Source of the DNA: Macrostomum hystrix | Taxonomy: Eukaryota > Animalia > Platyhelminthes | NCBI GenBank assembly: GCA_950097015.1 | Contig: CATNEN010000039.1 | Coordinates: 12,028,001-12,092,000, forward strand | Length of the DNA: 64,000 nt | Direction of reading: 5' to 3' | Part shown: positions 1-11,294 of the stretch, in pieces | How positions within the stretch are numbered: position 1 is the first letter of the stretch | Layout: the number at the start of each line of letters is the position of its first letter | Program-made: the position numbers and the translations under genes | Notes under the pieces: model-generated | Seen by the model: the letters and a program-made list of their open reading frames with translations, nothing else | Databases searched by the model: none | Told to the model about the DNA's origin: nothing

Positions 1-3000
1 CGCGGAATGCTGTGACAAGCACAATTTCCTCTATTTAGGAATCAGTTATAGTGACTGCTATTGCGGCAGCAGTATCATCGGATTTGAGAACAGCTCAGAG
101 ATCTGCGACAGCCTTTGTAAGAACGACGCGAAGAACTGCGGCTCCGAATCTGCTGTTACAGTTCTGCAGATAAGGGACACTGGTTCGTAATCTTCCTGTT
201 TTCCTATCCGTAAAGTTCAATTGTAAAGTGCAAAGTGCAAAAGTGCGAAACCGTTTACTATATGTAACCTCATTTATCAAGGTATCAATATTTTAGTTTG
301 CTGAAACAACCACTCGAAGGTCATAAAACAGTTTCTTACTCGTAGAAAAAGTTATGGAGGCTGGTTTTCGCCGAAAAGTGCACTATGGAGCTTAAAAAAC
401 TCTCTTATTCTGTTAAAATTCAGTGACTGTGTTTGTTTCCATATTTAGACATTTATCGATTTTTTTCAAGCTATATTTTTTAAGCATCAAATTCATATTT
501 TAATTTTTTCTGCATCAAGCTCCAGAAACAAAACAAAGCCACTCGAAAAACATATATATATTTAATTGTTGAAAAATGGAGGTTGTAGCCTAGTGTTTAG
601 GGCATCGGACTCACGACCTGAAGGTCGGGGATTCGATTCCCGACTCCACTGAAACAATTTGTGTCCTTTAGCAAGACACTTAACTCTGCATTGCTTCAGT
701 TCACCCAGCTGTTAAATGGGTACCAGCATTAGCTGGTATAATTGAAGGTGGATGTGGCGTCCCCCCAGTCCATGGACTGAACAGCTGTACGCAGGAAGCA
801 GCCTTATTGCTGAGGAGCGGGAGTGCGTCTGGGCCGAACGGGCTCAGCGTCTCGACGCCAAATGGGCGGATGTCAGCGTACTTGGCAGCTGCTGCGGCGG
901 CACGAGGGCCAACAGCAGAGGCGTGCAGGTGACTTGGGGCGCAGGTGCGAGTGACTTTCGCGTCCCAGGCCAACGGCAAACCCCAGCTCGAACGCCACCA
1001 CAGTGACGCCGTCGAACCGGCGGCAGTCGCTCCCTCCCAAGAAAGAAATTAGCATTTTGTTTTTTCTGTGGCGGATATTGTTTAAATATTTCGAGTTGTC
1101 TGCGTAGACGTTGTTTGTGTTATTATTAACGGACAAGTAAAAAATAGTCTCAAGAGTTGGGCAAATTAAATGAAAAAGAACAGCTTTGGATTTTTCGTAT
1201 ATTTTTTCTAAAAAGTTTCCCGTCCTTCCACTCCTAGTGGAAGGTCCTCGTTTCTTCGTCAGACAGAAATAACCAGCACGTGTGACTTTCTCATTACACA
1301 GACAGCCGGCCATTGCACATCGGAAACTTCAGCCAGTTGACAGCCTTTTCTAGTGGACCATACTGCTTCTTCACCGAGCAGGAGAGTGGCAGGCTCAGCG
1401 CTGCCTTCTGCAATATACCCTACTGTCGTGAGTAGTAGGCTAGTAGTTGTAGGCTAATAATTAAGATATCGCTGGTTTGTCTGTCTCAACTCCCTTCGCA
1501 CCATGCCCTCCCCCGACCGTGCATTCCGGCCTTTCCCCTTGCGTTTCAGTGGCAATAGATGGGCTTAGGGGCTGATGGTAGGGCTTCGAAGCCCTTACCC
1601 TACCCTGGGTTTTGAGTAGGTCCTTGTTCTAACAAGCAGGCGCTTATTTGATCTAGCAAGAATAAATTCTTGGTTCAAATCACATATTTTATTTTAATCA
1701 TTTTCTCTATAGTTCGCTTCAACAATAAACACAAATCATTCAGCGATTTCAAAGGACTACGATTGCATAGTGAGTTCGGAGGACAAGTCCACTGAGCAGT
1801 TGACACGGTCTCGCTACACCGGTCGGCACAATGTCACCAACACCGGTCGTCAGTGTATGCCTTGGAGTCGCGTGCGAAACATTCAGGCCGACATTGTCGC
1901 AAAGCACAGACATAGTGAGTAAGCGTTAGAAAACTCGATACAGATAGTAAATGCGCCTATGAATCCAAAGGGCCTATGAGCGCCCGAGGCTATATGAAAA
2001 AGACGACAATGATAACTATCACTCCTTGTAGCCTAGGGATTGTAGGGATAGTAGTTCTTAGATAATGCTACTAATAGTAATCCTAATACTACGTTACTGC
2101 AACTAATGCAGCAGCAACTACGTAAAAACGGTTAATTTACTTTTTATTACAGATGTTCATATAGCTGGCCAGCTGCTTGACGTCCAGATTGAGACACCAG
2201 ACGTAATTGAGGACAGTAGCGACAATTACTGCAGGCCAGCAAGCATTGCTTTAGACGCCATTGCTATTACTTCATCGAAGCGCTTCGTGTAAGCCAAGCT
2301 TTTATTACTAGCCAAGCGGAGTGAAGACATTAAATTTAATATTTAGTTTTTTTAATTTTTAGACGCGTCAATGCTGTCGTGTCGGAGGTTCCTATCTGTT
2401 TTCCTGAAGAATACTTTGTTCAAATGCAGCCACAGTCCATACTTGTTGAGACGATTCTCTCTTTGATCATCGAGAGCTGTGAAGTTCCTCTGTGTTGTAA
2501 GTTGTTCTGGGCTTCCGGTGAGAACCCCCCCCCAGCAGGAGAGAAAAATGATAGCCAAGCAGGGGTGGTGCATTCACAACCCACAAATTCAAGAATTTTC
2601 CCAATGATATACCTGAATTCCTGAATGCCTAAAATTCACAGTTTGTTTAACATTCACAAAGCCGATATTTCGCAACTATCACTTCCTCCATGAATTAAGA
2701 AATTCGGGGTTGAAGCTAAGGTGAGTTGATGACTTTGATAATTGAGACTACTTCTAACGGTGCAACCGATCTCAGACGCTGCAATGCCCAGCATTGTGGG
2801 CACCATCCGAGAGTCCGTTGGCAGCCACCTGCTGGCTAGACAGTTCGGCAGCGACCTGAGCGTCGGTCTCGCCGACTGCAGCTTCGCCGGACAAAAGTGC
2901 ACAGCCGAGCACTTTGTGACTGTCGCACATCCGCAGCTGGGCATGTGCCACCAGTTTCTGCAGCAGAAGTTCACCCACAACATGACTAGCACGCAGGTGG

Positions 3001-6000
3001 CGGAGAGTGAGTTATCAATCAAGTACTTCACGGATGCCACCGACTCCAATGGTCTGATGCTGCCCAACATTGACAGGCTGGCAGGAGTAGTGGACGGTAG
3101 CAGCGGAATTTCCGCTAGTCAAGTGGCGTTAAAGGTAAACTTTTTAGCAGCGTTTGAGTACTGCATCAGCGATTTACAGGGCCTTTGTCGCTAAATCCAC
3201 AGGCGATAGTCGTTCCGCAAAAGACCTTCCCGTGGAAATCAAAGGGCGTCGACGTAGCCACTGCTCAGCGCTTGGACATGCAGCTGAGGTTTAACAGATT
3301 CTCACGGCTCTCCACGGCAGCAAATCCATGTCTGGATGTCGCTGAATCTGTCACTTACCGGCTACCAATGTGGAAGCTATCATCGTCTGACGAGGATGAT
3401 GGGTAATGAGACTAGCGTGTCTATGCGCTTCTAGGACAGTTTTTCATAACTAGTAGATTAGCGAGAAATATATGTCAAGATTTTTATGCCTAAAGTCTTG
3501 AGAGACGCACTCAGCTCACGATATTTGAGAACGTCTGAGGGATGAGTGGCAGAGCGGTTGACGCATTTTTTACTCGCGTCGAGGTCCCCCACCTCAGCCA
3601 CATTTTTTGGTGCGCAGCCGCTGAGAGAAGGCTTGGGGGCTTGTCGTACAATTTACGCCCTTGAGGGCCAATCTCCTTGGCACAGTGAGAGTGTCAATGA
3701 GAAAGTCAGGGCAGATAAACAAACCTGCGTAAGCGTGTGCCTGCGTACAGTATCTGTGTGCGTATGTGCTCAGGAGTCAGTGAAATGGGCAGAATTGCCT
3801 TCTCGCTGGCTGCGGATCTACTGTCACCTAAAGATGTGCAAGTGCCAACAGCCCTTCTGCATTTTATATATTATTGTGATATTAATAGCATCTGTAAAAA
3901 TCAACACTTTCAAAATGCAAATAGTTGAACATTTCTTGGCAATGAAAATCAGAAAATATTTTATTCTGTGCAAACTACGTAGACTTTTTATTATATTTAT
4001 GATTGAATCAAGGACGCAAAAGTGGCGTAAGAAATTTATTTAATTCTGACCAACAATTTTAGGTTAGACTCGGACGCTCTGATCATTGAACGGACAAAAA
4101 ACTGGACTTCAAAGATTTCACTACTGCGAGATATGCTGCTGAAGCTGAATGGTTCCAGGTTGATAATTTTTTCCTTTGTAGTTTAATCGAGGCCACACTT
4201 AATTTGGGGCGCAGTCGCGTAAAGAAGGCTTGGGGGCTTGGCTTGAAATTTACGCCGTTGAGGGCCAACCTCCAAGGCACAGTGAGAGTGTACACTGCCT
4301 GATGATGAGAAGGTCACAAGGCAGATGTACACACCCTGTGTGAGCGTGTGCCTGCGTACAGTATCTGTGTGCGTGTGAGCTCAGGAGTCAGCGAAATGGG
4401 CAGAATTACCTCCTTGCTGGATGCGGGTCTTGGGTCATTAAATAATGTACCATTGCCCACAGCCCAATCGCAAATGATTTTATTATTTTTTTTCCTTTTC
4501 CTATTAGGATTTTAGCCTCGGGCTAGGGCGTCGGACTCACGAATTGTGTATTTCGAAGGTTCGATTCCCGACTCGACTGGAACAAAATTTGTCCTTTCGT
4601 AAGACATTTAGTTGAAAAACTTAAATTGGTATCACTCTAATTGCCCTTGGGGTTTGTGGTCCGACCGAGCGTAGCCTGGTTGGAGGTTAAGCCGGCGAGT
4701 TGGGGGCTTGTGCATTGGTGCGGGGGGTGCATGTACGTGGCCAGGTCGCGGGGCCGCCTCCCCCCCTTGGGGTCGGCCTTGCCAAGCCCTATTTAGTGTG
4801 TCGCGCTGCGCACCGGCGGCGTCTCTCTTTATTGAAGCTTATCAGAGGCTTATTGAACTTGCGCTCGCCGTGTCAACCGTCTGGCTTCGACTCACTGGTT
4901 TAATGTAAACTTCAATGCAAGCCCCCTAGCCTTCTCTCCGCGGCTGTGTCCCAAATTGAGGCTTTGGAATTTTTAGTTTAGAAAGCTGAATTCTGATCGT
5001 TACAGCGCCCTGACAGTCGCGGGTAGCGAATTTAAAGTATCCGACCGAGAAGACTGTGCGAACAACTTTGTTGTGCAAATTTTCATCGACAACTGCCAGT
5101 GTCTGCCACCGTTGCTGCCTATTCGTGAAGACCTGTTTCGAAAGTACAGCTACTGTTTTGACTCCACTGGCTCAGCTAAAGTTACGAGCAGCAAGGAGAA
5201 GTGCTACGTAGAACAGGTTTCAAAGATATCACAATACCGATTTGAGGCCTTTAGTGTGTGCAAATCGCCCTGTAGCACTATGGACTACAGTACCCGCTTC
5301 CTCACTTCACCATGGCCCAATTTGCGGCCTCTTCAATCTCTGGAGTTCTTGAAAAAGATGGCCGCAGACTACGGGTATCCAATCGACATCAAGGTTATGA
5401 GAGGCATTGGTAGTATCTATCACACTTATCTGAGAGCTAAGAAAATTATGGACACCCCAGCCAGCGATCGGAGCTTCGAAGAAATTCAGAGCTTCAGCAG
5501 CGAGCTGGACGACTTGCAGTGCCGCCTGTCACAGCTCACTGTTCGGGCGTATCGATCTAGAGGGGAAGAGGTGACAGAGGAACTGGCCTACCCAGCCAAG
5601 AATTTGCTGGCCGACATTGGAGGTAAAGCGTTTCTGTACTATTAATAGTAGAAAGACCAGGGGAAGTATTTCAAATACATAGCGGAGTATTTCAAATACC
5701 CCCATTTTTCTTTTTCTGTATCTCCTAAAATATTCAACTAATCGCTATGAAAATCCAGAACATGGGCTGAAGTTTTTCGCTCTACCCGATGAAACGACTT
5801 CCAGAATCACAAAAATCTTCATCGTCAAGATGTTCAACGATTCTCGCCGGGATATCAAGTGGCAAAAACCAAAAATATCCGCGTAGTGTTTCTGCTCACA
5901 AAATTTCATTTATATGTAATATGTAATATCAGCTACGAGTATCTGCTCATTATATTGATAATTATTGTATTTTTAACCAATATGGATTCGCAATAAAGGT

Positions 6001-6527
6001 TGCTAATGCATAACAATGTTAGTTATCCTTGTCACCAGGCTCTTCTACAAGAATCGATGAATATCTCGACGATTCTGACTTGGGCGGCATTGAGAGTTCG
6101 TTTCATCGTAAAATGCGGAAAGTTTTGATTCAGCTTGTCGACTTTCACGACAATCAGTCATTCGGTTTTTGAGCTGTCGTGAAGTAGGCAGTGGGCATTT
6201 GAAATACCCCTGCGGTCTTTCCCCAGGGTGAAAAATAGCTTTTTACTGTTAAGGGCTTTCTGATAGATTTTCTAGCTGCAGAACTCTATCTGATCTTCTT
6301 TAGGAGCGCTCGGTCTCTGGTCTGGAATCTCAATCCTCACGATCTGCGAGCTCCTTGAGCTGCTAATCTATCTAGGCCAGGCGCTGGATCTGCACAGACG
6401 ACAGCAGCGTCCGCAGCAGACTTCAGAGTCAGGCGACGTGGATCATTGTCAGTCGAAGCCGCAGGCTCAGTCGCTCGCTGATGCCGAGTTAGATGGCGTC
6501 GAAAAAGGAGAAATGACGTACATGTAG
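1..6527 (+). CDS. DEG/ENaC (FaNaC-like) amiloride-sensitive channel subunit with WSC and kringle domains; 5' end outside window
   Basis: Phase-consistent exons: <1-182 (WSC: ECCDKHNFLYLGISYSDCYCG...CDSLCKNDAKNCGSESAVTVL), 1302-1427 (GPYCFF...AFCNIPYC), 1744-1914 (DYDC...YTGRHNVTNTGRQCMPWS), 2153-2288 (SSDNYCR), 2363-2496 (VPICF...ESCEVPLC), 2776-3134 (DCSFAGQKC...HPQLGMCHQF), 3203-3402, 4063-4158, 5006-5622 (Cys-rich thumb, LLADIGG), 6304-6527 (ALGLWSGISILTICELLE, TM2 with GIS filter; TAG). No in-frame stop found. Confidence 0.85.
578..785 (+). mobile_element. tRNA-derived CORE-type SINE (family 1)
   Basis: tRNA-like head (GTAGCCTAGTG A-box, GATTCGATTCC B-box) followed by GTGTCCTTTAGCAAGACACTTAAC...CACCCAGCTGTTAAATGGGTACC, resembling the CORE domain; other copies at 10341-10537(-) and ~4510-4610(+). 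Confidence 0.75.
790..1040 (-). mobile_element. Remnant of the restriction-like endonuclease C-terminus of a CRE-like non-LTR retrotransposon
   Basis: Frameshifted DCRRFDGVT...LAWDAKVTRTCAPSH...AAAAKY...PFGVETLSPFGPDAL resembles the RPDG...LAWD...K..KY...PFGVET signature. Confidence 0.6.
3539..3855 (+). mobile_element. tRNA-derived SINE (family 2)
   Basis: Head GGGATGAGTGGCAGAGCGG, body CAGCCGC.GAGAGAAGGCTTGGGGGCTTGTCG...CTCAGGAGTCAG.GAAATGGGCAGAATTGCC; more than 10 copies or fragments in the window. Confidence 0.8.
4190..4470 (+). mobile_element. SINE family 2, 5'-truncated
   Basis: Same body sequence as 3539-3855 and 28390-28730. Confidence 0.75.
4510..4610 (+). mobile_element. SINE family 1 fragment
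   Basis: TAGGGCGTCGGACTCACGA...GGTTCGATTCCCGACTC...GTCCTTTCGTAAGACA matches the head at 578-680. Confidence 0.6.
5645..6228. mobile_element. Non-autonomous DNA element (MITE A)
   Basis: Imperfect TIRs GAAAGACCAGGGGAAGTATTTCAAAT / ATTTGAAATACCCCTGCGGTCTTTC; body shared with 28217-29010 and 58100-59095. Confidence 0.7.
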
Positions 6528-7590: not shown

Positions 7591-8282
7591 CTTCAGACCC
7601 TTGCTTTCCTGTCGCCTCTGCTTCTGACTTTCGGAGACAGAATTGGAGAGACTAATGTACATTCTGTAAGATACATGTACTCAGTTTATTGTCTATGGTA
7701 AGATTGAAAACCGAGATTGAGACTGTAAAGGAAAATGATTTCTGGCCTTGTGGCATTGAATTTAGCACAGATAAAACGGCGGTCGTTGAACAAGAGTGAA
7801 GGCTACTTCTGAGAATTGCTTCTTTCGTGAAGAATATCTGTCTACTAATCTAACGCACGAACATGGTGGAAGAGGTGAACGGACCGGAGTCAGAGTCGGA
7901 GTCGGAGTCAAAAGCGACCGGAAGCGACGTTGATGGCCGCATCGGGATTCTTGGCCAAATATGGGTTCTCTGTCATCATTGTCGAACTGCTGCCAGCTGG
8001 AGTCATAATGTCACTCAGCGCGCCGCTATTGATGTTGTCAGCGGCATAGTTGTTGTTCGTGTTGTGGTCGTCGCACAAAGCCAACCTCTGAAACTCGTAT
8101 CCCAGCGTCAGGCCAATGTAAATAAACAGCTCTAGCAGTTCGCAAACTGTCAGAATTGAAATGCCCGACCACAGCCCGAGAGTTCCTGGAGTGCGGAATT
8201 TCGGTATGCGAATCGAGTTGGATTCTCAGGTTGAGAAGAAGGAAGAGAAGAAATTACACCTAGCCCAGTAGGCTCAGGTCTA

Positions 8283-8572
8283 CCGTACAACTCAGACGGC
8301 TACATCCTATGCAGGCGAACAAGCAGCCGACACCCAGAGAAGCGACTGGCAGTCCTAGGCTACGCCGACGACCTGGTCCTGTTAGCCTCCACCGCCGAAG
8401 GTGCCCAACGCCTGGTTGACGGCCTCGCTGCAAGGGTTGGCCTCAAAATCAACACCAAGAAGACGGAGGTCCTCACTGTGCCTGCTGACCTGCCAGCTGA
8501 CATCCGTCTTCCCAACATGGACAGCTCGACGGCAACATCCCTATCCCGGTGTGAGCAGTTCCGGTATCTTGC
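8283..8572 (+). mobile_element. LINE reverse transcriptase fragment (RTE-like)
   Basis: RRTSSRHPEKRLAVLGYADDLVLLAS...VGLKINTKKTEVL...FRYL. Confidence 0.8.
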
Positions 8573-10340
8573 ATACGACTATTGCGACTGCATACTGTTT
8601 AGGTTGGGCCACGGGTAGGTAATGTGGGGAACGCTGTACTCTGTCATTTCACAAGGCATCATGCACCGGCTGACAGCGTCAAACTGGTACTGCAGCAGCT
8701 TCGAAATCTGCTCCCTGTAGCACATGTCGGTCTCCAGGGAGACGCTTCTGTTACTCTTCACATCGAAACAATAAGTATGATACGAGAAGAGTTCAACAGG
8801 GATAGGTAGGAATGAAGGCAAGCAGCCACAGTTGTCGATGAAGCTTCGAACTACTTGCGTATTGATGCAATCGTCTCTGTCTGCGACGTTGAACTGAGCT
8901 TCTATGTCTGGTAGTGTTCTAAAAATTAAGAACAACCAAAAACGGAAAGCTTATATATCAGCTTGGCGCTTCTATAGGTATTTGCAATAAAAATTAGAGC
9001 TACTTCTATAAAAAATATTTTTTTATACCTCGAGCTTCCTTGTATTTGAAGCTGCTCCCGAATCAGTAAAATCTTCGCCAACCAATCCGATGCTGTTGTG
9101 ATTGCGTTCAGATCGAAGCTAGTGCTGCAAAGTGAATAAATGGCACTCAGAAACAGTGTTAATAAAAGAGTAACTTTAGACGAAATTACTTTGTGGAACA
9201 ATGCTGCTCACTCTGGATCATGATTAGCCTCGGCATGCTTCCAAGAGTGCAACCTGTACTTTTGTCTCTTTGGCTCAGAGATTGGCTCAGATTTCGTGAG
9301 GCATGGCCTCGAGGCGGTGGACAGTCAAGAGACTTTATCAAACCGCAGCTGCAGATCCATGCGCTGAGAGGCGGCAACGTCGATTCCTTTTGAAGGCCAG
9401 GGAAATGTGCTCTCTGGCACAACAATTGCCTGCAGATTGCCGTGATTGCGGATTTCCATAAAAAAACTCTAAGCAAATGATAAATTATTTTTTTACTGAC
9501 CTTAAATGCAATCTGACTGCCGCCAGAGTTTGAACTTTGATGAATTAGTCGCGTAAGTTTATCTATGTTTGATACAGACTGTCTGTTGGAGTCTGTATTG
9601 TCTGTAAAGTACTTCATTGACAGCTGGCTCTGGGCCAACTGCATGCTAGTCATGTTGTAAGTAAATTGCCGGTGACGAAACTTGAGATACGTGCCCAGCT
9701 GCGGATGTCTGATATTCACAAAGTGCTCGGCGGTGCACTTTTGACCAGCAAAGCTGCACTCAACAAGGCCGATACTGAGATCGCTGCTGAACTGCTGGGC
9801 GAGCAGGTGGCTGCCGACTGAGTCCCCGATGACACCAGCAACAGTTGGCAAGTTGGAGTCTGAAATGACAAATTGTGTGAAAACCAATCTGTACTCAGGG
9901 TCTCAAAAGCTTGAAGCAATAAAAATTCTTACAGCACAGAGGGATCTCGCAAGGCTCGAAGTCAACTTCAAACAGGCCGCCGATGCCCATGACGTCAGGA
10001 AAGCAGCCAGGAACGTCTGTCATGGCCTTGGCGAATCGACTGCAATTTTTATAAGGATACGGGTAGTTACTATGAGTAGTAACATGCGACAAAATCTGAC
10101 TCTCACTGTGCCATCGGCATTCCGATGTGGGACGCTTCGTCAGATATAACTGGAGCCGATCTGCAGAAATTGTCGCTGCTACTGGCATTGAAGTCCGCAG
10201 TTTGAATGTGAAATCCCGTCAGCTTGAATGGGCCTGTAATGAGTTGAGGAATAATATAAAAAGTTTAAACAAGTACAATTTTTATTACCTACAGCACAGC
10301 CGCAGATATTGCGCGGTTTGCATCTGAAAGCTACGTACGA

Positions 10341-10537
10341 CTGTTCAGTCCATGGACTGGGTGACGTCACACCTAACCCTCAATTACCCCAGCTGATGCT
10401 GGTACCCACTCAACAGCTGAAGCAATGCAGAGTTAAGAGTCGTGCTAAAAGACACAACATGTTCCAGCGAACTACGAAATCGAGTCCCCGACCGTGAAGC
10501 ACTAACCGACGATCTAACCACTAGGCTACAACTCCCG
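10341..10537 (-). mobile_element. SINE family 1 inserted in the pseudogene kringle exon
   Basis: Reverse complement of 578-785. Confidence 0.75.
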
Positions 10538-11294
10538 TTGTATCAAACCCCAAAAGCTGAGCCAATCAAGGCTCTGTTCCCGCATAGTAACTGACTTCTC
10601 ATGAGTGCAGCCTTACTCAGCCTTGTCCTCGGAGCTCACGATACAGTCATATGCACCTGACATGGCTGCAATTACGAATTTAAGCACAAAAGTAATTCAT
10701 ATTGCTCCAGAGCCAACGAGTTTAAATGTTTTACTCACGACAAAACGGTACATCACAGAAGCCAGCATTTCGAAAGGACAGTCGAAATTGTCAGTGACGT
10801 CATCACCGGTGCTTTAAGGAACCTATCAAAGACTGTGTGCTAAAAACTGAAGCGTTTTTTGCTTTAGAAAAAAATATTTTTCAAGTCTGTACGAGCTAAC
10901 TGCATCTCTTTATTTCTAGCTTTAGACACAGCTGGGCACCCGGTCATATTGGCCGGGGAGTCTGCGAAACATGCCAGAGAGCGTTCAACAGTTTCCGTCT
11001 CAGCAGATTGGAGTGTGGCTTCATTACTGATAGTGGCACCTGAATCCCATGCCTAAATTGTTTTCTTTGCATTAATCTCTATTAGAGAGAGGGAGCAAAA
11101 TTTGAGTCGGAGGCCAGAAGGCAATTAAAATATATGTACAGTCCGACGTACAAACTTTGGTAGTTGAAGTGGTAAATATTAAAACCATGTGATGCATAAA
11201 CAATCATTCAAACTGACGCAGCAATCAAACAAATTGATTAGTTTTTAAATATGGCAAACTATCGCATGGTTTTCCAACAAGAATCACATAAAAA

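What the first reader, a model, noticed from the sequence alone, without database searches (positions are those of the whole stretch)
1..6527. DEG/ENaC channel carrying WSC and kringle domains in its extracellular loop
Seen: manual splicing gives one uninterrupted frame, WSC -> half kringle -> full kringle (C1 DYDC, C2 TGRQCMPW, C3 DNYCR, C4 VPICF, C5 ESC, C6 VPLC) -> DEG/ENaC palm/thumb -> TM2 (GLWSGIS). The ORF track misses this because the exons are short. Established: the region preceding the C-x-F-x-G-x-x-C motif is the variable finger domain that governs ligand or protease gating in ENaC/ASIC/FaNaC; WSC is a putative glycan-binding module; kringles bind proteins or lysine; kringle + WSC is the Kremen receptor pairing. 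Inference: an ion channel with grafted receptor modules, possibly gated by a glycan or protein ligand or tethered to matrix. I do not recall a characterised channel with this architecture, but unannotated flatworm homologs may exist.
Basis: partly seen in the sequence, partly recalled or inferred. Interest (0 to 1): 0.88.

Follow-up and report, generated by a model that had tools for sequence, protein, structure and literature searches.

The report
Sodium channel carrying kringle-WSC-kringle arm
A flatworm gene encodes a DEG/ENaC sodium-channel subunit whose outer "finger" is extended by about 390 residues (a kringle split open by a sugar-binding-type WSC domain, then a second kringle). The design is kept in at least 11 sister genes and in Macrostomum lignano transcripts, but its function has never been studied.

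Summary
Window 1-6527 carries the last ten exons of a 12-exon, 1047-codon gene. All 11 introns are GT-AG and the frame is unbroken. The two missing exons lie 0.7-1.6 kb upstream of the window. Exon 1 has the start codon, the HG motif and TM1. Exon 2 is the N-terminal two-thirds of a kringle.

Profile comparison places exon 2 on kringle columns 2-64 and exon 4 on columns 65-87. A second, divergent kringle (three exons) follows, then the channel core up to TM2 with a G-I-S filter.

The same exon order recurs at 11 loci in this genome. It also occurs in transcript-derived M. lignano proteins (PAA82974.1, PAA47210.1) named only "WSC domain-containing". Cassette exons are under purifying selection. 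The cassette sits where ENaC has its protease-sensing GRIP domain.

Its function is inferred only; my reading is a docking or tether arm. No RNA run was listed for this species, structure prediction failed, and I found no paper on this design. The scan had already reported paralogous copies elsewhere in this genome.

Verdict: a new variant of a known channel family.

The parts
1..182 (+). 3' part of exon 3, the WSC domain. The exon starts at L006:9898, 103 nt before the window. It is phase 1-1, 285 nt, with 10 Cys.
   Evidence: The complete exon (L001:1400-1681) scores 31.2 bits for Pfam WSC, above the 27.8 cut-off, covering profile positions 2-81 of 82. The exon-family profile best matches the Kremen-1 WSC in the PDB, 2e-8. 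Splice sites.
579..794 (.). Dispersed short repeat inside intron 3. It is not part of the gene product.
   Evidence: At least 40 copies at 91-97% identity on many contigs. ARAGORN finds no tRNA.
1302..1427 (+). Exon 4: C-terminal third of kringle 1 (C4, C5, C6; GPYCF...FCNIPYC). Phase 1-1.
   Evidence: The family profile A3 hits only kringle C-terminal thirds in the PDB (19 of 19 hits). hhalign against this genome's kringles: columns 65-87, E 2.2e-5, probability 76%. G, P and 3 Cys are invariant in 10 paralogs.
1744..1914 (+). Exon 5: kringle 2, first part (C1 YDC, Y-x-G, C2-x-x-W). Phase 1-1.
   Evidence: Pfam Kringle E 0.007. Profile A2: the 60 PDB hits shown (of 69) are all kringle proteins, best 1.3e-6. 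hhalign columns 9-33, E 1.1e-7, probability 94%.
2153..2288 (+). Exon 6: kringle 2, middle part (DNYCRP = C3). Phase 1 to 2.
   Evidence: hhalign of A9 against kringles: columns 46-60, E 3.5e-4, weak. T, D and C-R are invariant in 5 paralogs.
2363..2496 (+). Exon 7: kringle 2, last part (VPICF = C4, ESC = C5, VPLC = C6). Phase 2 to 1.
   Evidence: hhalign of A10 against kringles: columns 76-87, E 9e-4, weak. The contiguous M. lignano counterpart P0027 aligns with kringle columns 8-87 in one piece, E 3.2e-4.
2776..3134 (+). Exon 8: the channel core resumes (C-S-F-A-G-Q-K-C ... G-M-C-H-Q-F).
   Evidence: Pfam ASC positions 148-205. Aligns with gamma-ENaC residues 257-307, LVTCFFDGVSC...GNCYTF. 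64% identical to M. lignano P0002.
3203..3402 (+). Exon 9: channel extracellular core.
   Evidence: 62% identical to P0002 residues 943-1008. Present in the paralogs. Splice sites.
4063..4158 (+). Exon 10: short linker exon of the extracellular domain.
   Evidence: In-frame GT-AG exon that is needed to keep the frame. It matches no paralog at E 1e-3, so it is the least certain exon.
5006..5622 (+). Exon 11: Cys-rich thumb and palm, up to LLADIGG.
   Evidence: Pfam ASC E 4.4e-10, positions 296-436. In 1.84 billion representative proteins it finds only M. lignano relatives plus one unrelated weak hit. In this genome it matches only the cassette-bearing loci and their remnants.
6304..6527 (+). 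Exon 12: TM2 (GALGLWSGISILTICELLELLIY, with the G-I-S filter position), cytosolic tail and stop TAG.
   Evidence: Pfam ASC positions 438-455. The sequence is read directly. Stop and phase.
8103..10839 (-). Degraded paralog lying tail-to-tail with the gene. It is not part of the gene.
   Evidence: tblastn finds TM2, thumb, core and kringle-2 pieces. There is an in-frame stop in the exon-9 equivalent, a lost core Cys, and only short fragments of the TM1, kringle-1 C-part and kringle-2 first exons.

Best explanation
SHOWN. This is an intact 12-exon gene for a DEG/ENaC channel subunit of 1047 codons.
- Order along the protein: cytosolic N-terminus with the HG motif, TM1, the start of the finger, kringle 1 N-part, WSC, kringle 1 C-part, kringle 2, the rest of the extracellular core, TM2 with a G-x-S filter, and a cytosolic tail.
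- The roughly 390-residue cassette lies between the two membrane helices, so it is extracellular. It occupies the finger position, where ENaC has its GRIP domain and FaNaC its peptide pocket.
- The WSC domain is nested in a surface loop of kringle 1, exactly between kringle profile columns 64 and 65.
- The cassette is bounded by phase-1 introns, and four of its six exons are phase 1-1. That is the signature of exon shuffling of extracellular modules. This genome is rich in both modules.
- The cassette was acquired once. That happened before the subfamily diversified and before this species split from Macrostomum lignano. Tandem duplication then amplified it to at least 11 loci.

INFERRED. The cassette is a docking arm on the gating-critical finger. 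It binds an extracellular glycan-bearing or protein partner, either soluble or in the matrix. Through the finger, that binding either gates or modulates the Na+ pore, or anchors the channel as a tether for force.

My odds are about 0.85 for the gene and architecture, and about 0.4 for a docking or tether role that affects gating.
For: Gene model:
- All 11 introns are GT-AG, the CDS is 3144 nt with no in-frame stop, and intron 1 is only 76 nt.

Channel core:
- Pfam ASC matches exon 1 (2e-15, positions 1-109) and exons 8, 11 and 12.
- The motifs TAHGLGR, FPDVYIC, CSFAGQKC and GLWSGISILTICE are read directly.
- Exon 1 aligns with FaNaC1 7-88, PPK26 70-153 and alpha-ENaC 55-143. Exon 8 aligns with gamma-ENaC 257-307. 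The cassette therefore replaces ASC profile positions of about 110-147, which is the finger.

Modules:
- WSC is above the Pfam cut-off and its best solved match is the Kremen-1 WSC, 2e-8.
- Split kringle: the exon-2 family maps to kringle columns 2-64 (E 4.8e-6, probability 86%). The exon-4 family maps to columns 65-87 (E 2.2e-5).
- Each half has 3 invariant Cys. In kringles all three disulfides join the first three Cys to the last three (established knowledge).
- Kringle 2.

One gene rather than two:
- The same exon order occurs at 11 loci on 4 contigs.
- M. lignano PAA82974.1 (1052 aa), PAA47210.1 (1091 aa) and others carry TM1, cassette and TM2 in one ORF.
- That annotation is built from RNA-seq-based transcript assemblies (PMC5730564).

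Selection and age:
- Between tandem copies A and B, pN is 0.16-0.49 against pS 0.49-1.05 in every cassette exon.
- Cassette exons are 42-65% identical to M. lignano P0002, the same range as the core exons.
- The two species' sequences interleave in the tree of the thumb exon; starred branches force at least 3 changes.

Module supply:
- The genome holds at least 150 scored WSC matches (436 candidates) and 28 kringle matches.
Against: - There is no RNA evidence for this species or this copy; no RNA run was listed.
- Kringle never reaches Pfam's cut-off of 34.3 bits. It scores 16-24 bits even in whole M. lignano proteins.
- The exon-2 family profile finds no kringle in the PDB by sequence.
- No 3D support was obtained. 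AlphaFold2 of P0009 with a 6-sequence alignment gave pLDDT 33, and the WSC model was too weak for a fold match.
- Skipping all six cassette exons, or any of the phase 1-1 exons, would keep the frame. Cassette-free isoforms are therefore possible.
- Exon 10 (4063-4158) has no detectable paralog match.
- The kringles lack the acidic pair after C-R-N-P that forms the lysine-binding site of plasminogen kringles (read), so classical lysine binding is unlikely.
- Nothing here measures binding, gating or expression.
Confidence: 0.8

Rival explanations
1. There are two genes. The WSC and kringle exons would belong to a separate secreted protein that sits between, or inside an intron of, the two halves of an ordinary channel gene.
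For: No transcript data exist for this species. Exon 1 (ending in phase 1) could splice in frame directly to exon 8.
Against: - Only 76 nt separate exon 1 from exon 2, and there is no Met or signal-peptide exon or stop codon anywhere in the cassette.
- The order TM1-cassette-core is identical at 11 loci.
- The kringle N-part exon occurs nowhere in the genome except just downstream of a TM1 exon.
- M. lignano transcript-derived ORFs read through from TM1 to TM2.
Confidence: 0.03
2. The cassette is optional. It would be included only in minor or tissue-specific isoforms, while the main product is a plain channel. Alternatively, single modules such as WSC could be skipped to give different arms.
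For: Exons 2, 3, 4 and 5 are each phase 1-1, and the whole block of exons 2-7 is phase 1-1, so any such skip keeps the frame. M. lignano P0011 and P0021 lack the WSC and the kringle-1 C-part.
Against: Cassette exons show pN well below pS and are as conserved between species as the core. Full-length M. lignano models include the cassette. P0011 and P0021 may be a different paralog or an imperfect model.
Confidence: 0.12
3. The cassette has no role in gating or docking. It would be a structural or quality-control ornament, for example for folding, trafficking, subunit sorting among the many paralogs, or shielding of the finger.
For: No canonical lysine-binding residues are present. Among paralogs the cassette diverges at the same rate as the core rather than faster, which does not look like a ligand arms race.
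Against: The cassette sits on the finger, the part that controls gating in ENaC, ASIC and FaNaC (established knowledge; positions). About 390 residues with 22 Cys kept under purifying selection in at least 11 genes and two species is costly for an ornament.
Confidence: 0.2
4. The cassette is a protease-controlled lid like the ENaC GRIP domain, and cleavage within it opens the channel.
For: The position is the same as GRIP. Gene B has R-E-R-R-R just before C2 of kringle 1.
Against: The basic motif is not conserved in the paralogs: copy A has Q-L-R-R and the others have none. Disulfide-locked kringle and WSC folds would not be released by one cut.
Confidence: 0.04

Closest known systems
DEG/ENaC channels with solved structures (FaNaC1 8ON7/7YVB, ASIC1/ASIC5, ENaC 6WTH, PPK26 9PZN)
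   Same: Shared features are the HG motif, two transmembrane helices, the post-TM1 F-P-x-V-x-x-C motif, C-x-F-x-G-x-x-C, a Cys-rich thumb and the G-x-S filter in TM2. FaNaC is the best sequence match for the M. lignano relative P0009 (7.9e-12).
   Different: To my knowledge (not tested here), none of these has a recognisable foreign module in the finger. Here about 390 residues of kringle[WSC]-kringle are inserted there.
ENaC GRIP domain (gating relief of inhibition by proteolysis) in the finger
   Same: The location is the same, between the post-TM1 strands and the C-x-F-x-G-x-x-C strand (gamma-ENaC 257-307 aligns with exon 8). It is a lineage-specific insertion that controls gating.
   Different: GRIP is a beta-rich insert with excisable inhibitory tracts. 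Here the insert is made of disulfide-rich receptor modules, and no conserved furin site is present.
Kremen-1/2 (Dickkopf co-receptors: kringle-WSC-CUB-TM)
   Same: Both combine kringle and WSC modules. The Kremen-1 WSC is the best solved match of the WSC exon family (2e-8).
   Different: In Kremen the modules are in series and followed by a CUB domain on a single-pass receptor. Here the WSC is nested inside the kringle, a second kringle follows, there is no CUB, and the carrier is an ion channel.
Macrostomum lignano PAA82974.1, PAA59863.1, PAA47210.1, PAA85180.1, PAA46972.1 and A0A1I8IV52 (named hypothetical or 'WSC domain-containing protein')
   Same: They have the same architecture from TM1 to TM2. 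Per-exon identity to the closest of them, P0002 (A0A1I8IV52), is 42-65% and is lower to the others. They fall into the same orthology groups.
   Different: They come from another species, are uncharacterised, and are not described as channels with a kringle/WSC arm in any paper I could search. The M. lignano channels tested by Dandamudi et al. 2022 are other genes.
Yeast Wsc1 and polycystin-1 (WSC-bearing surface sensors). This comparison rests on my own knowledge, apart from PDB 7PZ2 appearing as a hit.
   Same: In both, a WSC module sits on a membrane sensor linked to wall or matrix sensing. 7PZ2 (the Wsc1 mechanosensor domain) matches the WSC here.
   Different: Those proteins are not pore-forming DEG/ENaC subunits, and no kringle is involved.

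Membership tests
DEG/ENaC (Pfam ASC, PF00858) | Significant match to the ASC profile across the protein | tested here: met
   Exon 1 scores 57.1 bits and exon 11 scores 39.6 bits, both above the 23.6 cut-off. Exons 8 and 12 give weak collinear hits.
DEG/ENaC (Pfam ASC, PF00858) | Cytosolic HG motif followed by TM1 and the post-TM1 F-P-x-V-x-x-C motif | tested here: met
   TAHGLGR, LIWVTFLMGTYSGFAYHVYTLF and FPDVYIC are read in L006:8408-8897. This stretch aligns with FaNaC1, PPK26 and alpha-ENaC.
DEG/ENaC (Pfam ASC, PF00858) | TM2 with the G/S-x-S selectivity filter and conserved acidic residues | tested here: met
   LLADIGGALGLWSGISILTICELLELLIY across exons 11 and 12. The codon spanning the junction was worked out by hand.
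DEG/ENaC (Pfam ASC, PF00858) | Trimeric, amiloride-sensitive, Na+-selective channel | not testable with these tools
   This needs expression and electrophysiology.
Kringle (PF00051) | Score above Pfam's gathering cut-off (34.3 bits) | tested here: not met
   Exon 5 scores 17.1 bits. Whole M. lignano relatives score 16-24 bits. The window's own exons could only be tested singly.
Kringle (PF00051) | Profile-level homology to bona fide kringles, collinear over the domain | tested here: met
   Against 17 canonical kringles of the same genome: exon 2 maps to columns 2-64 (4.8e-6), exon 4 to 65-87 (2.2e-5), exon 5 to 9-33 (1.1e-7), exon 6 to 46-60 (3.5e-4) and exon 7 to 76-87 (9e-4). The PDB hits of the exon 4 and exon 5 profiles (all 19, and the 60 shown of 69) are all kringles.
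Kringle (PF00051) | Six Cys in the 1-6, 2-4, 3-5 pattern, with Y-x-G, C-x-x-W, C-R and P-x-C landmarks | tested here: met
   Kringle 1 has 3 + 3 invariant Cys in exons 2 and 4. Kringle 2 has 2 + 1 + 3 in exons 5-7. The disulfide pairing itself is inferred.
Kringle (PF00051) | Kringle three-dimensional fold | tested here: inconclusive
   AlphaFold2 of P0009 gave pLDDT 33. The two-chain test of exon 2 with exon 4 gave no answer.
WSC (PF01822) | Score above Pfam's cut-off (27.8 bits) over the whole domain | tested here: met
   31.2 bits, covering profile positions 2-81 of 82, for L001:1400-1681. Copy A scores 35.1 bits.
WSC (PF01822) | Similarity to a solved WSC domain | tested here: met
   The family profile matches the Kremen-1 WSC at 2e-8 and yeast Wsc1 (7PZ2) at 6e-5. 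The AlphaFold2 model was too weak for a fold match.
Kremen receptors | Serial kringle-WSC-CUB ectodomain on a single-pass membrane protein | tested here: not met
   No CUB hit appears in any exon or relative. The WSC is nested rather than serial, and the carrier has two TM helices of the ASC type.

The most novel reading that the evidence does not exclude
The kringle[WSC]-kringle arm is the channel's own ligand sensor. On this reading, these would be DEG/ENaC channels opened or closed directly when a glycan or protein (from matrix, mucus, a partner or prey) docks on a receptor-type module grafted onto the finger. That would be a gating mode not known in this family. The roughly 11 paralogs would read different ligands.
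Probability: 0.2. Interest if true: 0.85.

Novelty: new variant of a known kind. Interest (0 to 1): 0.64.

Why it matters
- DEG/ENaC channels are gated through their finger by protons, peptides, proteases or force. How the finger acquires new inputs is an open question.
- Here nature has grafted ready-made receptor modules onto that exact spot. The result has been kept for a long time and in many copies.
- This gives a natural test of modular gating, using deletion or swapping of the arm.
- It is a candidate direct link between glycan or matrix recognition and an ion current.
- It is also a clean example of exon shuffling into a channel's gating domain, and of one small disulfide domain nested inside another.
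- M. lignano has RNAi, in situ and transgenesis tools, so the question can be tested.

Tried and rejected
1. Every exon was searched singly by reference.
2. AlphaFold2 of the M. lignano relative P0009 with six database sequences gave mean pLDDT 32.7 and is unusable.
3. I tried to deepen that alignment with exon fragments (A1, A6, A7). MAFFT scattered the fragments, so these alignments were not used.
4. The two-chain prediction of exon 2 with exon 4 gave no answer, score 0.00. It is not evidence either way.
5. AlphaFold2 of the WSC exon gave pLDDT 61, and Foldseek against the PDB found nothing below E 2.7.
6. The exon-2 family profile found no kringle in the PDB. Its comparison with the exon-5 profile was weak, with only 15 columns around C-x-x-W.
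7. The ESM Atlas search on the exon-2 equivalent of P0009 returned only ASC clusters and was uninformative.
8. No RNA sequencing run was listed.
10. Paper searches for kringle or WSC together with ENaC/degenerin, and for the M. lignano gene ids, found nothing relevant.
11. The word-based homolog search on the cassette of P0009 found only P0009 and P0022.


Full report
WHAT IS THERE

I fixed every boundary by hand and then by script. The in-window exons are ..182, 1302-1427, 1744-1914, 2153-2288, 2363-2496, 2776-3134, 3203-3402, 4063-4158, 5006-5622 and 6304-6527. All introns are GT..AG, no exon has an in-frame stop, and the stop is TAG at 6525-6527.

The window is G000:C39:12028001-12092000. 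I fetched the 40 kb upstream of it. Locus L006 is C39:12018001-12028000 and holds the missing 5' end.
- Exon 1 is L006:8408-8897. It carries the ATG, then F-C-G-Y-T-T-A-H-G-L-G-R (the HG motif), a hydrophobic TM1, and F-P-D-V-Y-I-C.
- A 76-nt intron follows.
- Exon 2 is L006:8974-9279.
- Exon 3 starts at L006:9898 and runs into window base 182.
- The CDS is 3144 nt, giving 1047 residues, similar to the 1052 residues of the M. lignano relative P0009.

Every search used single exons by reference, so the whole-protein tests for this copy were left out.

THE CHANNEL CORE

Pfam ASC matches exon 1 (57 bits, profile positions 1-109). It also matches exon 8 (positions 148-205), exon 11 (39.6 bits, positions 296-436) and exon 12 (positions 438-455).

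Exon 1 aligns with FaNaC1 7-88, PPK26 70-153 and alpha-ENaC 55-143. Exon 8 aligns with gamma-ENaC 257-307 over C-x-F-x-G-x-x-C...G-x-C-Y/H-x-F. TM2 reads G-A-L-G-L-W-S-G-I-S-I-L-T-I-C-E-L-L-E, which has the G-x-S filter and the acidic residues typical of the family.

The cassette therefore replaces ASC profile positions of about 110-147. By established knowledge of the ASIC, ENaC and FaNaC structures, this is the finger. In ENaC it is the site of the GRIP domain and in FaNaC it is the site of the peptide pocket.

THE CASSETTE

WSC. The complete exon 3 passes Pfam's cut-off (31.2 against 27.8 bits, positions 2-81 of 82). A profile of ten paralogous exons (A11) best matches the WSC of Kremen-1 (2e-8) and then yeast Wsc1.

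Kringle 2. This is exons 5-7.
- Pfam is weak (E 0.007).
- A profile of the exon-5 family (A2) hits kringle proteins only among the 60 PDB matches shown, best 1.3e-6.
- I built a reference alignment (A8) from 17 canonical single-exon kringles of this same genome.
- hhalign places exon 5 on columns 9-33 (E 1.1e-7, probability 94%).
- It places exon 6 on columns 46-60 (3.5e-4) and exon 7 on columns 76-87 (9e-4). The last two are weak singly, but all three are collinear.
- The M. lignano database entry P0027 is exactly this domain in one piece. It aligns with kringle columns 8-87. Its nearest named ESM Atlas clusters are all kringle at scores of 0.85-0.87, which is a lead only.

Kringle 1 is split.
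- The exon-4 family (A3; G-P-Y-C-F...C-N-I-P-F/Y-C, with G, P and three Cys invariant) hits only the C-terminal thirds of kringles in the PDB. It maps to A8 columns 65-87 (E 2.2e-5).
- The exon-2 family (A4; C-R-x-T-x-x-G-x-E-Y-x-G ... C-x-x-W-N ... R-C-R-x-P, with three invariant Cys) maps to columns 2-64 (E 4.8e-6, probability 86%).
- The two halves abut exactly at columns 64/65, and the WSC exon lies between them.
- In kringles the three disulfides (1-6, 2-4, 3-5) each link one of the first three Cys to one of the last three. Exon 2 and exon 4 each carry three Cys, an odd number, while the WSC exon carries ten. This fits one kringle with the WSC looped out after C-R-x-P.

I could not confirm this in 3D. 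AlphaFold2 of P0009 failed (pLDDT 33), the two-chain test gave no answer, and the alignment could not be deepened.

ONE GENE, AND A FAMILY

- The kringle-1 N-part exon occurs 11 times in the genome, always just downstream of an ASC TM1 exon.
- After fetching those loci, tblastn with each exon shows the same collinear order throughout: TM1, kringle N-part, WSC, kringle C-part, kringle 2, core, thumb, TM2. The loci are three on C39, five on C25, two on C8 and one on C30.
- The thumb exon type is found only at these loci and their remnants.
- Copy A lies immediately upstream, from L004:8401 to L006:about 7400.
- An HMMER scan of 1.84 billion representative proteins with exon 11 found 15 proteins. 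Fourteen are from Macrostomum lignano and one is unrelated noise.
- Several of these (PAA82974.1, PAA59863.1, PAA47210.1, PAA85180.1, A0A1I8IV52) have ASC plus WSC by Pfam. On alignment they show the whole order from TM1 to TM2.
- The GenBank annotation of that genome was made from an RNA-seq-based, genome-guided transcript assembly (PMC5730564). In a relative, the single-mRNA architecture therefore has transcript support.
- For this species none was listed. An earlier scan note (s1-316719) reports RNA for another copy, which I did not check.

SELECTION AND HISTORY

- Between copies A and B, every cassette exon has pN (0.16-0.49) well below pS (0.49-1.05, mostly saturated), like the core exons.
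- Against M. lignano P0002, cassette exons are 42-65% identical and core exons 48-64%.
- I built a maximum-likelihood tree of the thumb exon from the 11 loci and nine M. lignano proteins. I left out P0014 (noise) and short fragments. The tree interleaves the two species in at least four groups, and starred branches force at least three label changes.
- Members of three different groups (P0002, P0009, P0026) carry the full cassette.
- The simplest reading is one acquisition before the subfamily radiated and before the species split.
- The cassette's outer introns are phase 1, and exons 2-5 are each phase 1-1. This is the class typical of shuffled extracellular modules (established knowledge, Patthy).
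- The genome is very rich in WSC exons (at least 150 scored of 436 candidates) and has 28 kringle matches.

HOW IT LIKELY WORKS

Shown: the arm is extracellular. It lies between TM1 and TM2, holds 22 Cys, and carries 8 of the 11 N-x-S/T sites. It sits on the finger.

Inferred: because the finger transmits ligand, protease and probably force signals to the pore in other family members, the arm most likely docks an outside partner. It would then either gate or modulate the channel or tether it.
- WSC modules bind glycans or cell-wall polymers and occur in mechanosensors such as Wsc1 and polycystin-1 (my own knowledge).
- Kringles bind proteins. Here they lack the acidic pair of the lysine-binding site, so classical lysine binding is unlikely.
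- I put about 0.4 on a docking or tether role that affects gating, about 0.2 on a merely structural or sorting role, about 0.12 on the arm being optional through exon skipping, and less on protease control.

COMPARISON AND NOVELTY

It is a member of DEG/ENaC, since all testable defining features are met. It is not a Kremen: there is no CUB, the modules are not in series, and the membrane topology differs.

I found no paper describing kringle or WSC modules in a DEG/ENaC channel. The M. lignano channels tested in oocytes by Dandamudi et al. are other genes. The architecture is present, unremarked, in public M. lignano entries.

The scan had already flagged paralogous copies in this genome. One of those notes said that no full-length database protein has the design. 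I found that several do.

Noticed in passing
window:8103-10839 (- strand): A degraded paralog lies tail-to-tail with the gene. TM2, thumb, core and kringle-2 pieces are recognisable. There is an in-frame stop in the exon-9 equivalent, a lost core Cys (G-T-Y-L-K-F in place of G-M-C-H-K-F), and only 9-21-residue fragments of the TM1, kringle-1 C-part and kringle-2 first exons. It is probably a pseudogene.
   Followed up: partly
L006:6790-7380 (C39:12024790-12025380): After TM2, the upstream copy A has about 24 in-frame tandem copies of a 24-nt unit encoding D-G-D-G-V-A-R-R, which forms a long repetitive cytosolic tail. Gene B has no such repeat.
   Followed up: no
L004:1117-1437 (C39:12009117-12009437): An orphan copy of the TM1 exon (about 61-66% identical to gene B's). 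No cassette or core exons follow it before copy A, so it is probably a remnant of a further tandem copy.
   Followed up: partly
window:579-794: A short dispersed repeat in intron 3 with at least 40 copies at 91-97% identity on many contigs, including an array on C25 near 8.76-8.93 Mb. ARAGORN finds no tRNA in it.
   Followed up: partly
window:3599-3854 and 4196-4465; also L006:about 9400-9700: A second repeat family (about 83% identical copies) sits in introns 9 and 10, and by eye a similar sequence lies in intron 2.
   Followed up: no
G000:C7:5915512-5935527 and G000:C1:8450513-8502454: Very large arrays of WSC-domain exons. The C7 array repeats with a period of about 1.7 kb and has identical scores in each unit. 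WSC is a massively expanded module in this genome.
   Followed up: no
G000:C38:9498977-9509508: A gene or cluster with at least 13 consecutive canonical kringle matches on one strand.
   Followed up: no
G000:C8:3892023-3894100 (L015:3023-5100): A short family member with TM1, thumb and TM2 pieces but no clear cassette or first core exon (only one marginal kringle N-part-like match, E 0.006). The thumb match has 3 TGA and 1 TAG inside. It is probably a decayed copy.
   Followed up: no
G000:C25:5184133-5184411 (L011:7133-7411): The kringle-1 N-part exon of one C25 paralog contains an in-frame TAG. That copy may be inactive.
   Followed up: no
L006:about 9105-9120: Gene B has R-E-R-R-R, a furin-like basic run, just before the second Cys of kringle 1. 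Copy A has Q-L-R-R and the other paralogs have none, so it is probably chance.
   Followed up: partly
whole genome G000: At least 91 matches to the DEG/ENaC TM1 exon, many in open frames of 550-700 residues. The channel family as a whole is greatly expanded here, mostly as genes with few introns and no cassette.
   Followed up: no
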